From positions 310,001-374,000 of IMG/VR virus record IMGVR_UViG_3300027896_005002: a stretch of DNA of 64,000 nt; one strand, 5' to 3'. Both the position numbers and the translations under genes were made by a program. This document shows positions 2,641 through 6,320 of this stretch, in pieces. The notes beneath the pieces are model-generated. The model had not been told where the DNA came from and searched no databases. It saw nothing but the letters and a program-made list of their open reading frames with translations. The first letter of the stretch is position 1. Every line of letters begins with the position of its first letter.

Positions 2641-2712
2641 ATTACTATATTCTATTTTAAAGACAATGAATAACCAGTCTTCTTTAACATCAACTTTCAA
2701 ACTAGAAAAGAG

Positions 2713-2779
2713 AGACGACAACAGGAATTGAACCTGCGTAGGCAGTTTTGCAGACTGCCAACCACTCGGACACGCCGTC
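2713..2779 (-). tRNA. tRNA-Cys(GCA), truncated D-arm, possibly a pseudogene
   Basis: Acceptor GACGGCG/TGTCGTC, U73, anticodon arm GCAGT-CTGCAAA-ACTGC, T arm GCAGG-TTCAATT-CCTGT; 3' strand of D stem missing; no encoded CCA. Confidence 0.75.
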
Positions 2780-4344: not shown

Positions 4345-4435
4345 TGGAGACGGCGGTGGGATTTGAACCCACGTTGGAGCTTTCGCTCAGCAGTTTTGCA
4401 GACTGCGATCTTCGACCAACTCGATCCACGCCGTC
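4345..4435 (-). tRNA. tRNA-Cys(GCA) with a long variable arm
   Basis: GACGGCG/CGCCGTC acceptor, U73-CCA, D stem GATC/GATC, anticodon loop CTGCAAA, extra arm GAGC-GAAA-GCTC, T arm GTGGG-TTCAAAT-CCCAC. Confidence 0.92.
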
Positions 4436-4436
4436 A

Positions 4437-5654
4437 TTAAGTATTTTCTCTAATAAAACGCCTAACCTGAGTATGAGACACATTCCATAAATTAGCAAGT
4501 TTTGAAATAGATCCCCATTTTTTTAAATCTATATTTTGTAAGTCTTGTAATCTTTGATTATGAATCTTAAATGATTTCACTTTATTCAATACAATAATAA
4601 GTTTTTCTATTTGCTTTTTTGTTTTTCGTTTTATTTGTTTTGTTGTTGTTATACTTTCTTTCTTTTGATTTATGTTTTCTTTTTTTCGATTATTTAATAG
4701 TAATAATTTGTTTTGCAATTTTTCATTAAAACTACAAACAGTTCTTTTTTTAAGTACTTCTAAAACTTCATTCAATACACTTTTAGACTCATTACAAACA
4801 ACTTTCCATGGTAATCTTATTACTTCAACACCCAAATTATTAAGCAATTCATCTTTTCGTTTATCAATTTCTTTTTGATGATTATATCTATAATGTTGTG
4901 ATCCATCAATTTCAATTGCTACATTTAAATTTTGAAAAAAGAAATCAATTCTATAAAAAGACACTCTATACTCACGAATATAATCTTTATTTAATTTATA
5001 ACCTGATGTTTGTAAAAAATTATTGAAAAATTTTTCTGCAAATGACTCGTGAAATTGTCGTTTGCACATTCTACCTTCTTTATGACTTCTTTTAATAACA
5101 TCAGACATATTTCTTTTTTCACAATTTTTTAATACATGATTTAAATCTCTCTTTGTAAAACCATTTTGTTGCCTAATAATTTTTATCGGCACATTATCAT
5201 AATAAAGTGATTTTATTTTTTTAATATTTTCAGTTGTTAAATGACATTTTTCAATATGCATTACAAAAATATTTGCAGGAAATGAATGATTACACTTATC
5301 ACAAATATACAATCCATTTGTGGATTTATATTGTGTAAAGTCGACTTTTTTATATTTTCTTATTCGTCTTAATCTTCTTGGACCTAAACCATTGCATGAA
5401 TTATAATGTATCTTATATACTTTACTGCTTATAAAATTTCCACACTTAGAACATAAAATTTCTTTAAGTTTTTTTATTTTTGGACCATTACAATACTTTA
5501 CATGATTTGACCAACTTGATTTATCTTTAAACGATGTATTACACTTATCACATTTATAATCTTTATTCTGTTTATGTCTCCATCTAAAATGATTTGCAAA
5601 TAAAGATGATGAACTAAATGGCAATTGACATTCATCACAAAAATAATTTTCCAT
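4437..5654 (-). CDS. C2H2/C2HC zinc-finger + DUF559/Vsr-like endonuclease (putative free-standing homing endonuclease)
   Basis: Four CxxC...H fingers; nuclease motif EYRVSFYRIDFF...IEIDGSQH...DKRKD; C-terminal HTH-like segment; inserted between two tRNAs. Confidence 0.8.
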   Translation of the reverse strand: MENYFCDECQLPFSSSSLFANHFRWRHKQNKDYKCDKCNTSFKDKSSWSNHVKYCNGPKIKKLKEILCSKCGNFISSKVYKIHYNSCNGLGPRRLRRIRKYKKVDFTQYKSTNGLYICDKCNHSFPANIFVMHIEKCHLTTENIKKIKSLYYDNVPIKIIRQQNGFTKRDLNHVLKNCEKRNMSDVIKRSHKEGRMCKRQFHESFAEKFFNNFLQTSGYKLNKDYIREYRVSFYRIDFFFQNLNVAIEIDGSQHYRYNHQKEIDKRKDELLNNLGVEVIRLPWKVVCNESKSVLNEVLEVLKKRTVCSFNEKLQNKLLLLNNRKKENINQKKESITTTKQIKRKTKKQIEKLIIVLNKVKSFKIHNQRLQDLQNIDLKKWGSISKLANLWNVSHTQVRRFIRENT

Positions 5655-5669
5655 TATAACTCCTTTAAA

Positions 5670-5761
5670 CGGAAGATGAGAGAATTGAACTCCCAGTCCA
5701 ATTTTTATTTGGACAACTGTTTAGCAAACAGCCCCGGCGAACCATTATCCGGCTATCTTCC
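5670..5761 (-). tRNA. tRNA-Ser(GCT)
   Basis: GGAAGAT/ATCTTCC acceptor, G73, D stem CCGG/CCGG, loop TTGCTAA, long variable arm GTCCAA/TTGGAC, T loop TTCAATT; A at position 8; no encoded CCA. Confidence 0.9.
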
Positions 5762-5835
5762 AATTATAGAAGTTATAAAGACATAATCAATTGTATTGCA
5801 ATTAATTTAACCTCTCTAAGTTTACATTTATATAA

Positions 5836-6110
5836 TGGCTGGCTCGGAGGGTTTCGAACCCCCAACCTACTGGTTACACTTATCTATATATTTCTATATA
5901 GCGTGGACTTTCTCTTCACCATTTTCTATTTCTAGAATTTAGGTGCACCGTGTAAAGTCTCTACACATAAGAACTTTTAGTTCTCTTGCTCGGGATTGCC
6001 ATAGATTTCTCTTTAGGTTTCCCCGACTTAGCGGCGAGTTCATCTAAATATTTCTATTTAGAGCTGCGTTTGACCACAGCCAGTCGCTCCGCCTATTGAG
6101 CTACGAGCCA
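5836..6110 (-). tRNA. tRNA-Asn(GTT), intron-containing (exons 6076-6110 and 5836-5876)
   Basis: Joined exons give TGGCTCG-TA-GCTC-AATAGGCG-GAGC-G-ACTGG-CTGT^TAA-CCAGT-AGGTT-GGGGG-TTCGAAA-CCCTC-CGAGCCA-G-CCA; G73 fits Asn. Confidence 0.92.
5877..6075 (-). ncRNA. group I self-splicing intron (199 nt, no ORF) at tRNA position 35/36
   Basis: P1: exon GCUGU pairs with IGS GCAGC, U.G at the splice site; P AAGUCGGGGAAA, Q GCAAUCCCGAGC, R GUAGAGACUUUAC, S GAAGAGAAAGUCC; P9 hairpin; terminal omega-G. Confidence 0.93.
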
Positions 6111-6121
6111 GTAATTTGTAC

Positions 6122-6134
6122 AATTTCAAAGAAC
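6122..6134 (-). promoter_or_regulatory. boxA-like antitermination element
   Basis: GTTCTTTGAAATT just upstream of tRNA-Asn; resembles rrn boxA. Confidence 0.55.
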
Positions 6135-6152
6135 ATAACTTCGAAAATAATA

Positions 6153-6228
6153 TGGTGGGCGCACTCCGAGTCGAACGGAGATAAGAAGATTTTCAGTCTT
6201 CCGCCTTGTCCGCGTTGGCAATACACCC
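6153..6228 (-). tRNA. tRNA-Phe(GAA)
   Basis: GGGTGTA/TGCGCCC acceptor, A73-CCA, anticodon arm GAAGA-CTGAAAA-TCTTC, T arm CTCCG-TTCGACT-CGGAG; 76 nt. Confidence 0.93.
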
Positions 6229-6230
6229 AT

Positions 6231-6243
6231 ATTTTCAAAGATC
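6231..6243 (-). promoter_or_regulatory. boxA-like antitermination element
   Basis: GATCTTTGAAAAT between the terminator and tRNA-Phe. Confidence 0.55.
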
Positions 6244-6258
6244 ATTTATACTCAAAAT

Positions 6259-6297
6259 AAAAAAGGCTCCATCAACATTTGTTGGTGGAGCCTTTTT
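6259..6297 (-). terminator. intrinsic terminator of the putative attenuator (symmetrical, may be bidirectional)
   Basis: GGCTCCACCAAC-AAAT-GTTGATGGAGCC then TTTTTT on the minus strand; one C-A mismatch. Confidence 0.85.
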
Positions 6298-6320
6298 ATA
6301 AATAATCGCCGATTATTTAT

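What the first reader, a model, noticed from the sequence alone, without database searches (positions are those of the whole stretch)
5836..6110. Very compact group I intron splitting the anticodon (35/36) of a phage tRNA-Asn
Seen: a 199-nt ORF-less intron with P/Q/R/S core elements, omega-G and a P1 helix placing the U.G pair at U35. Established: classic bacterial tRNA group I introns sit at 33/34 (fMet), 34/35 (Leu) or 36/37 (Ile, Arg), and the compact Azoarcus model intron is about 205 nt. I recall 35/36 Asn introns being reported in Patescibacteria, which should be verified. Standard tRNA scans may miss this gene, and it supplies the Asn arm of the proposed attenuator. Inference: splicing could add a control step or keep the anticodon from nucleases until maturation.
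Basis: partly seen in the sequence, partly recalled or inferred. Interest (0 to 1): 0.7.

Follow-up and report, generated by a model that had tools for sequence, protein, structure and literature searches.

The report
Self-splicing intron in phage tRNA-Asn
A huge freshwater phage carries its asparagine tRNA gene split inside the anticodon by a small self-splicing RNA (a group I intron); this intron type is already known and common in bacteria, so the case is real but ordinary, apart from sitting in a phage.

Summary
The pre-tRNA spans 6110-5836: 5' exon 6110-6076 (ends at U35), a 199-nt ORF-less group I intron 6075-5877 (ends at omega-G), and 3' exon 5876-5836 (includes CCA). Rfam RF00028 scores 55.2 bits (cut-off 50). 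Across seven homologues, 98% of cells pair and 39 of 82 pairs show compensatory changes. The invariant U35.G wobble in P1 and a covarying P9.0 fix the junction at 35/36, giving loop CUGUUAA and tRNA-Asn(GUU). They do not support the Thr(UGU) that ARAGORN's intron mode reports. The genome (416 kb, IMG/VR) has 28 other tRNAs but no other Asn, although Asn makes up 6.5% of codons.

It is not a new kind. Williams 2020 already lists the class Asn.4Ug (= 35/36). My scans found at least 44 bacterial species and 12 viral contigs with the same tRNA-Asn intron site, plus Tyr and Asp tRNAs split at the same position. At 199 nt it is on the short side for this lineage (181-844 nt, median 221). Splicing itself is not shown, because no RNA data cover it. 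Verdict: real, a new member of a known kind, of modest interest.

The parts
5836..6110 (-). Complete pre-tRNA-Asn(GUU) gene: 5' exon, group I intron, 3' exon with encoded CCA
   Evidence: Sequence. Spliced product folds as tRNA-Asn. All tRNA stems covary across 7 homologues.
6076..6110 (-). 5' exon, tRNA nt 1-35 (acceptor 5' strand, D arm, anticodon stem 5' strand, C32 U33 G34 U35); ends at U35 = 6076
   Evidence: U1-A72 and discriminator G73, as in the bacterial tRNA-Asn homologues.
5877..6075 (-). 199-nt ORF-less group I intron (IC3-like)
   Evidence: RF00028 at 55.2 bits against GA 50. Covariation. No ORF over 37 aa.
6062..6081 (-). P1 hairpin: exon G30-U35 plus intron G+1 pair with the internal guide sequence 6068-6062; the U35(6076).G(6067) wobble marks the 5' splice site
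   Evidence: U.G is invariant in 7 of 7 homologues. P1 score is 7 for 35/36 against 3 for 33/34.
6044..6061 (-). P2 hairpin, 7 bp with a GAAA tetraloop
   Evidence: 5 of 7 pairs show compensatory changes.
5965..6026 (-). P4-P5-P6 domain. P4 is 6026-6021/5995-5990. P5 carries a CCUAAA/UAUGG receptor-like motif. P5a has a GAAA loop. P6/P6a are included.
   Evidence: P4 and P5 are invariant; P5a and P6a covary. The tetraloop-receptor reading is inferred from sequence only.
5946..6036 (-). P3 (6036-6032 with 5950-5946), which encloses P4-P6 and the 5' strand of P7
   Evidence: 3 of 5 pairs show compensatory changes.
5906..5959 (-). P7 pseudoknot helix (5959-5954 GACUUU with 5911-5906 AAAGUC; guanosine-binding helix), which encloses P8 (5945-5917, GAAA loop, CCUAAA/AAUGG receptor-like motif)
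   Evidence: P7 is invariant in the 7 homologues and matches the Rfam consensus GACUA/UAGUC, with a compensatory difference from the tmRNA intron of the same genome. P8 covaries.
5877..5904 (-). P9.0 (5904-5903 AC with 5879-5878 GU), P9 hairpin (5901-5884, GAAA loop) and omega-G at 5877
   Evidence: P9.0 covaries (AC/GU to AG/CU) and is complementary in 57 of 71 family members. 6 of 7 P9 pairs are compensatory.
5836..5876 (-). 3' exon, tRNA nt 36-76 (U36 A37 A38, anticodon stem 3' strand, variable loop, T arm, acceptor 3' strand, G73, CCA)
   Evidence: Intron-less tRNA-Asn genes in other huge-phage contigs have the identical anticodon arm ACUGG-CUGUUAA-CCAGU.

Best explanation
This is a functional tRNA-Asn(GUU) gene of a huge (at least 416 kb) freshwater phage. 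A 199-nt, ORF-less, IC3-type group I intron interrupts it between anticodon nucleotides U35 and U36. The gene lies on the same strand as the neighbouring tRNA genes (Phe, then Asn, then Ser; whether they share one transcript was not tested). The intron folds into the standard P1-P9 core. Its internal guide sequence pairs with exon nucleotides G30-U35, so that U35 forms the U.G wobble marking the 5' splice site. An external guanosine attacks after U35. Omega-G (5877), positioned by P9.0 and bound in P7, then takes its place, and the freed 3'-OH of U35 attacks after omega-G. This joins the exons into an anticodon loop CUGUUAA. The product is the genome's only Asn tRNA, in a 31% G+C genome where Asn is 6.5% of codons. 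The intron is best seen as an inherited, tolerated selfish ribozyme of the known Asn.4Ug class, passed down vertically within a clade of huge phages. No extra function is needed to explain it. Shown here: sequence, structure, covariation, site, class membership and distribution. Inferred: that it actually splices, and that it does so without a protein.
For: RF00028 scores 55.2 bits, above the gathering score. The alignment of 7 pre-tRNAs with my P1-P9 and cloverleaf structure gives 98% paired cells, 39 of 82 pairs with compensatory changes, 0 of 500 shuffles as good, and 33-45% paired when the partners are slid. The U35.G wobble is invariant. P9.0 is complementary to the two bases before the inferred omega-G in 57 of 71 introns of the lineage, with several covarying pair types. 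In homologues L016, L044 and L070 only the 35/36 junction has both U-1 and omega-G. The genome has 28 tRNAs, including Thr(UGU), but lacks Asn. Asn codons are 6.5% of long open frames. Intron-less phage tRNA-Asn genes carry the identical predicted ligated anticodon arm. The class Asn.4Ug is in Williams' seed alignment. The same site occurs in 56 tRNA-Asn genes from at least 44 bacterial species and 12 viral contigs. The source DNA run has a contig spanning the locus with 0 differences, so this is not an assembly artefact. The record has an HK97-type capsid hit and phage-type replication genes.
Against: There is no RNA evidence. No run showed a spliced junction or a free intron for this phage. 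No P10 pairing between the 3' exon and the guide sequence is apparent. G30 and G31 are shared between P1 and the anticodon stem, so the two folds compete. The Rfam score is only just above the cut-off. Assignment to IC3 rests on architecture and on what Williams 2020 says of tRNA introns, not on a formal classifier.
Confidence: 0.88

Rival explanations
1. The gene encodes tRNA-Thr(UGU), with the same-length intron shifted by two bases to sit between U33 and U34 (5' exon ends at 6078, omega-G at 5879), as ARAGORN's intron mode reports.
For: GU is repeated at both borders, so this junction also has U at -1 and G at omega and gives a valid cloverleaf with loop CUUGUAA.
Against: U33 pairs with A in P1, not with G; the P1 score is 3 against 7. 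The two bases before G5879 (AA) cannot form P9.0, whereas GU before G5877 pairs with AC after P7, and that pairing covaries. In homologues L016, L044 and L070 the shifted junction has no omega-G. The genome already has tRNA-Thr(UGU) at G000:75743-75826 and lacks Asn. U1-A72 and G73 match the bacterial tRNA-Asn homologues.
Confidence: 0.03
2. The intron is a decayed, splicing-dead insertion and the tRNA-Asn is a pseudogene; the phage relies on the host's tRNA-Asn.
For: Splicing is not shown, the Rfam score is near the cut-off, no P10 is apparent, and the intron has no maturase or endonuclease ORF.
Against: Every helix of the ribozyme and of the tRNA is kept by compensatory changes across a clade that differs by 12-20% in sequence, and the catalytic core (P4, P7, J8/7) is invariant. 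This is the signature of purifying selection on a working ribozyme and tRNA. ORF-less introns of this size, such as the 205-nt Azoarcus intron, self-splice efficiently (PMC13168695).
Confidence: 0.05
3. Besides being a selfish element, the intron is kept because it gates tRNA-Asn maturation, or hides the U33-G34-U35 motif in P1 from anticodon nucleases or modification enzymes until splicing.
For: Only circumstantial. The intron has been retained vertically in a huge-phage clade. In the precursor, U33-G34-U35 lies inside P1.
Against: The same intron class is spread over many bacterial phyla with no link to phage biology. Other huge phages carry the same tRNA-Asn without an intron. The mature tRNA is exposed after splicing in any case. 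No regulatory element or ligand-sensing domain is visible in the 199 nt.
Confidence: 0.04

Closest known systems
Asn.4Ug class of bacterial tRNA group I introns (Williams 2020, bioRxiv 10.1101/2020.01.27.920355; seed sequence Pam37.Asn.4Ug)
   Same: Same host gene (tRNA-Asn GUU), same site after the 4th anticodon-loop nucleotide (35/36), U at -1 and G at omega, same CUGU/GCAG P1 pairing, and usually no ORF.
   Different: It sits in a huge phage genome rather than a bacterial chromosome. The tRNA body differs (acceptor UGGCUCG, not the UCC... typical of the bacterial homologues). The intron belongs to a phage or metagenome clade of its own; its nearest cellular relatives are introns from Omnitrophota, Melainabacteria and a PVC-group bacterium, at 54% identity or less.
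[quoted passage not shown]
   Same: A small ORF-less intron in a tRNA anticodon loop. It has P1-P9 without large peripheral domains, GAAA tetraloops on P2 and P9, and receptor-like motifs in P8 and P5 (the comparison of tertiary contacts comes from my own knowledge of the Azoarcus structure).
   Different: The site is 35/36 inside the anticodon rather than 36/37 after it, the tRNA differs, and the sequence is only distantly related. Activity is untested here.
Cyanobacterial and plastid tRNA-Leu(UAA) intron (Leu.3Ug), and the fMet.2Ug and Arg.5Ug classes
   Same: Same kind of element (an IC3 intron in the anticodon loop) and the same conserved P4-P5 core GGGAAACC...GGCAAUCC(Y)GAGC. That core is what let one pattern recover all these classes.
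   Different: Different tRNA, different loop position and a different guide sequence.
Group I introns in the T-loop of tmRNA genes (Williams 2002; PMC11915505)
   Same: The same phage genome carries one (G000:69613-69854, 91 bits) with a related core and the same ...AUAA(A)GUG 3' end.
   Different: It is inserted in the T-loop of the tRNA-like domain, not in an anticodon loop, and it is not a close paralogue of the tRNA-Asn intron in the tree.
Classical phage group I introns (T4 td, nrdB, nrdD; SPO1 and Twort introns)
   Same: Self-splicing group I introns that live in phage genomes.
   Different: By my own knowledge, those interrupt protein-coding genes, belong to other subgroups (IA) and often carry homing-endonuclease ORFs. 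This one interrupts a tRNA and has no ORF.

Membership tests
Group I intron (Rfam RF00028) | Score at or above the family's gathering threshold | tested here: met
   55.2 bits against 50, over the full model 1-253. The whole-window gathering scan missed it through its filters.
Group I intron (Rfam RF00028) | P1 helix with a U.G wobble at the 5' splice site | tested here: met
   U35(6076).G(6067) within a 7-bp P1, invariant in 7 of 7 homologues.
Group I intron (Rfam RF00028) | Terminal omega-G positioned by P9.0 and P7 | tested here: met
   G5877. P9.0 is AC/GU and covaries to AG/CU. It is complementary in 57 of 71 lineage members.
Group I intron (Rfam RF00028) | Conserved core P3-P8 and P4-P6 with the P3/P7 pseudoknot, supported by covariation | tested here: met
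   98% of cells paired and 39 of 82 pairs compensatory. P4, P5 and P7 are invariant.
Group I intron (Rfam RF00028) | Guanosine-dependent self-splicing | not testable with these tools
   No RNA run holds this phage's transcript. An in vitro assay is needed.
Asn.4Ug class (Williams 2020) | Exons form a tRNA-Asn(GUU) | tested here: met
   ARAGORN calls the spliced product tRNA-Asn. It has U1-A72 and G73, it fills the Asn gap in the genome's tRNA set, and its anticodon arm is identical to that of intron-less phage tRNA-Asn genes. An isotype-specific model (tRNAscan-SE) was not available.
Asn.4Ug class (Williams 2020) | Intron after the 4th anticodon-loop nucleotide, with U at -1 and G at omega | tested here: met
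   Enumerating the 8 possible sites gives k=4 (loop CUGUUAA, P1 score 7) as best; k=2 scores 3.
IC3 subgroup (Azoarcus/Anabaena type) | Compact core with no P5abc or P2.1, and P2 and P9 capped by GNRA loops that dock in P8 and P5 receptors | tested here: inconclusive
   The helix inventory and the GAAA loops on P2, P5a, P8a and P9 are seen, and so are the CCUAAA/UAUGG and CCUAAA/AAUGG motifs. Docking is inferred, and no formal subgroup classifier was run. Williams 2020 states that the classical bacterial tRNA introns are IC3.
Mobile group I intron with homing endonuclease | Endonuclease ORF inside the intron | tested here: not met
   The longest ORF overlapping the intron is 37 aa. A free-standing HNH-like ORF lies about 220 nt downstream, at 4437-5654.
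tRNA-Thr(UGU) with a 33/34 intron (ARAGORN's call) | U.G wobble at U33, and P9.0 before G5879 | tested here: not met
   U33 pairs with A in P1. AA before G5879 cannot pair with J7/9.

The most novel reading that the evidence does not exclude
The intron may be more than a passenger. It buries U33-G34-U35 in P1; by my own knowledge, not tested here, that motif is read by tRNA-guanine transglycosylase and by colicin-E5-type anticodon nucleases, whose targets are the GUN-anticodon tRNAs (Asn, Tyr, Asp, His). The scan pattern required CUGU, so it could only recover that family, and it recovered Asn, Tyr and Asp. The huge phage might thus keep a nuclease-resistant precursor pool, or time tRNA-Asn supply during infection. 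Huge phages may retain such introns in tRNA and tmRNA genes for that reason.
Probability: 0.04. Interest if true: 0.7.

Novelty: new member of a known kind. Interest (0 to 1): 0.3.

Why it matters
The main value is for annotation. Standard tRNA scans either miss this gene or call it Thr(UGU), so the phage appears to lack tRNA-Asn when it in fact encodes one. The same problem affects many huge-phage contigs. One core pattern recovered intron-split tRNA genes for Asn, Leu, Arg, Lys, Thr, Ala and CAU-anticodon tRNAs in viral contigs, and the main text of the main huge-phage survey does not mention introns. tRNA repertoires of large phages are therefore probably under-counted. The locus also adds natural 181-210-nt ribozymes to the pool of small group I introns usable as models. 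It does not reveal a new mechanism.

Tried and rejected
- **Phage GenBank search:** blastn of the locus against GenBank phages found no match.
- **Rfam whole-window scan:** at the gathering threshold it missed the intron. It appears only with laxer filters or a shorter stretch.
- **Other RF00028 hits in the genome:** the two weak hits (L003 at 17.8 bits, L004 at 12.5 bits) were not reproduced at E<=0.1 and are taken as chance.
- **RNA evidence:** the two 'RNA' runs hold only fragments from relatives. X15 has an unspliced-type contig of a relative across the 3' junction. X16 has a relative with a different 213-nt insert between the same exons. Neither shows a spliced junction.
[quoted passage not shown] 2025) is not held, so the site it reports could not be checked. 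Paquin 1997 and Biniszkiewicz 1994 are not held either.
- **Literature partly readable:** Table 1 of Williams 2020 is an image. The Asn.4Ug class was confirmed from the supplementary seed alignment instead.
- **Covariance model:** Instead I used a MAFFT alignment of close homologues with a hand-drawn structure.
- **Upstream motif:** GTTCTTTGAAATTA before the tRNA is conserved in the clade. It is not clearly enriched genome-wide (40 hits against about 10 expected without correcting for 31% G+C). I did not pursue it.

Full report
**What is there.** The feature lies on the minus strand. Reading 6110 down to 5836 gives a 35-nt 5' exon, a 199-nt insert and a 41-nt 3' exon.
- The 5' exon is UGGCUCG-UA-GCUC...GAGC-G-ACUGG-CUGU.
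- The 3' exon is UAA-CCAGU-AGGUU-GGGGG-UUCGAAA-CCCUC-CGAGCCA-G-CCA.

Rfam's group I model matches 6085-5884 over its full length at 55.2 bits (gathering score 50, E=3.5e-13) when the region is searched alone, and again in a search of the whole genome. The first scan of the whole window at the gathering threshold missed it, through its speed filters. Default ARAGORN and the Rfam tRNA model do not see the gene. ARAGORN's intron mode sees it but calls it Thr(UGU) i(34,199). The fold energy is 5 sd below shuffles. No ORF over 37 aa overlaps the intron. The source DNA run holds a 40-kb contig that spans 5700-6300 with no difference, so this is not an assembly artefact.

**Where exactly it splices.** GU occurs at both borders (CU-GU-GG...AAG-UG-UAA). 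Two junctions therefore have U at -1 and G at omega: 35/36 (loop CUGUUAA, Asn) and 33/34 (loop CUUGUAA, Thr). Four lines of evidence choose 35/36.
- **P1.** Exon G30-U35 plus intron G+1 pair with 6068-6062. U35 lies opposite G6067 as the wobble pair, while U33 pairs with A. A Williams-style enumeration of the eight possible sites gives a P1 score of 7 against 3.
- **P9.0.** The two bases before G5877 (GU) pair with the AC that follows P7. In two homologues this pairing becomes AG/CU. In 57 of 71 introns of the lineage the same two positions are complementary, with many pair types. The bases before G5879 (AA) cannot pair in this way.
- **Homologues.** In L016, L044 and L070 only the 35/36 junction ends in G.
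- **The tRNA set.** The genome has 28 other tRNAs, including Thr(UGU) at 75743-75826, but none for Asn. Asn is 6.5% of codons in long frames of this 31% G+C genome.

Intron-less tRNA-Asn genes in other large viral contigs carry the very anticodon arm predicted for the ligated product.

**Structure and conservation.** Pattern scans recovered close relatives in viral and metagenome contigs of 126-442 kb: L107, L247, L256 and L263, and a step further out L252 and L259. L262 is the window's own contig, Ga0209777_10000009. I aligned seven pre-tRNAs and drew the cloverleaf plus P1, P2, P3, P4, P5/5a, P6/6a, P7 (pseudoknot), P8/8a, P9.0 and P9.
- 98% of cells form standard pairs.
- 39 of 82 pairs show changes on both sides.
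- No shuffle out of 500 reaches these values.
- Sliding the partners by 1-3 columns drops pairing to 33-45%.

P4, P5, P7 and the U.G pair never vary, and the peripheral helices and all four tRNA stems covary. P2, P5a, P8a and P9 all end in GAAA. P5 (CCUAAA/UAUGG) and P8 (CCUAAA/AAUGG) look like tetraloop receptors. This is the compact Azoarcus-type IC3 design. The docking itself is inferred, not tested.

**How it most likely works.** This is an ordinary group I splicing pathway. External guanosine attacks after U35. Omega-G then replaces it in the P7 pocket, and the exons are ligated to give mature tRNA-Asn with its encoded CCA. The steps are inferred from the anatomy; no RNA data cover this phage. 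The simplest account of why the intron is there is that it is a tolerated selfish ribozyme.

**Is it new?** No. Williams (2020, bioRxiv 10.1101/2020.01.27.920355) lists four classical bacterial tRNA intron classes: Leu.3Ug, Arg.5Ug, fMet.2Ug and Ile2.5Ug. Williams extends the list to 21 classes. The seed alignment contains Pam37.Asn.4Ug, Mba143.Tyr.4Ug and Wba81.Asp.4Ug, where '4' means after the fourth loop nucleotide, that is 35/36.

Of the 83 loci from this and the viral-contig scans whose exons I could resolve, all with the intron after U35:
- 56 are tRNA-Asn(GUU), of which 12 are viral and 44 bacterial.
- 12 were first called tRNA-Tyr(GUA); 11 remain after dropping one doubtful call.
- 4 are tRNA-Asp(GUC).

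The bacterial hosts are mainly Patescibacteria, with Omnitrophota, Acidobacteriota, Melainabacteria, Elusimicrobiota, Pseudomonadota and others. The pattern itself demanded CUGU, so the restriction to GUN tRNAs is built in. Intron lengths run from 181 to 844 nt with a median of 221, and 11 of 71 are shorter than 199 nt. 'Very compact' is therefore relative.

**What is particular here.** The host is a huge phage. The record is an IMG/VR record of 416 kb, estimated 77% complete, with an HK97-type capsid hit and phage-type ligase and helicase. In a quick tree the window's intron forms a well-supported clade with four viral or metagenome contigs. Two more are sister to that clade, and next come Asn introns of Omnitrophota, Melainabacteria and a PVC-group bacterium. 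A second viral clade (L070, L016, L044, L242, L243) and single viral sequences sit elsewhere. tRNA-Asn introns of this class therefore appear to have entered phage genomes more than once. In the window's clade the intron has been inherited together with a phage-specific tRNA body (acceptor UGGC...). The tree is short and quick, so the branching order deserves caution. I found no paper in the held library that reports group I introns in phage tRNA genes, and the main text of the main huge-phage survey does not mention introns. That is absence from a partial library, not proof of novelty.

**Verdict.** The functional speculation is unsupported. The finding is a new member (in a phage) of a known kind (the Asn.4Ug IC3 intron). 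Its interest is modest and mostly concerns annotation.

Noticed in passing
L001:1501-2112 (-) = G000:C1:69613-70224, outside the window: The same phage genome encodes a tmRNA (RF00023, 80 bits) whose T-loop is split by a second group I intron (RF00028, 91 bits, about 236 nt). P1 pairs UCAAU with GUUGA, and the 3' end is AUAAAGUG. tmRNA T-loop introns are known in bacteria (PMC11915505); I did not find them reported for phages. In the tree this intron is not a close paralogue of the tRNA-Asn intron.
   Followed up: partly
Viral contig loci L006, L018, L027, L039, L042, L051, L052, L054, L060, L061, L063, L076, L080, L090, L120, L250, L251: One IC3 core pattern recovered many other intron-split tRNA genes in IMG/VR contigs. 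By site enumeration they include Leu(UAA) 34/35, Arg(UCU) 34/35, Lys(CUU) 35/36, Lys(UUU) 34/35, Thr(UGU) 34/35, Ala(UGC) 34/35 and CAU-anticodon tRNAs 36/37. ARAGORN's isotype labels for these are often wrong. Phage tRNA counts are probably under-estimated.
   Followed up: partly
window 4437-5654 (-): A 405-aa ORF with a weak HNH-endonuclease match (phrog_559, E=1.6e-8) sits inside the tRNA cluster, between tRNA-Ser(GCU) and tRNA-Cys and about 220 nt downstream of the intron-bearing tRNA-Asn. It could be a free-standing homing endonuclease like T4 SegB in its tRNA cluster. Any link to mobility of the ORF-less intron is untested.
   Followed up: no
window 4345-4435 (-) and 2712-2779 (-): There are two odd tRNA-Cys(GCA) genes. 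One is 91 nt with a long variable arm (Rfam tRNA 47.9 bits). The other is 68 nt with a poorly paired D arm (36.1 bits).
   Followed up: no
window 6111-6140 (-), and the homologous positions in L107, L247, L256, L263: A motif GTTCTTTGAAATTA lies directly upstream of the tRNA-Asn 5' end in all five members of the phage clade, and a similar TCTTTGAAAATAT precedes tRNA-Phe (6229-6245). It may be a promoter or a processing signal. Genome-wide enrichment is unclear.
   Followed up: partly
window 5838-5878 and 6076-6110, run X16 record 13: A metagenome contig from another sample aligns to both exons of this tRNA-Asn but has a different 213-nt insert between them. Distinct intron variants therefore occupy the same site in related elements.
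   Followed up: no
G000 whole genome: ARAGORN finds 28 uninterrupted tRNAs for 18 amino acids in two clusters (60.8-90.4 kb and 312.7-316.2 kb). With the split Asn gene, only Trp has no tRNA in the 77%-complete record.
   Followed up: no
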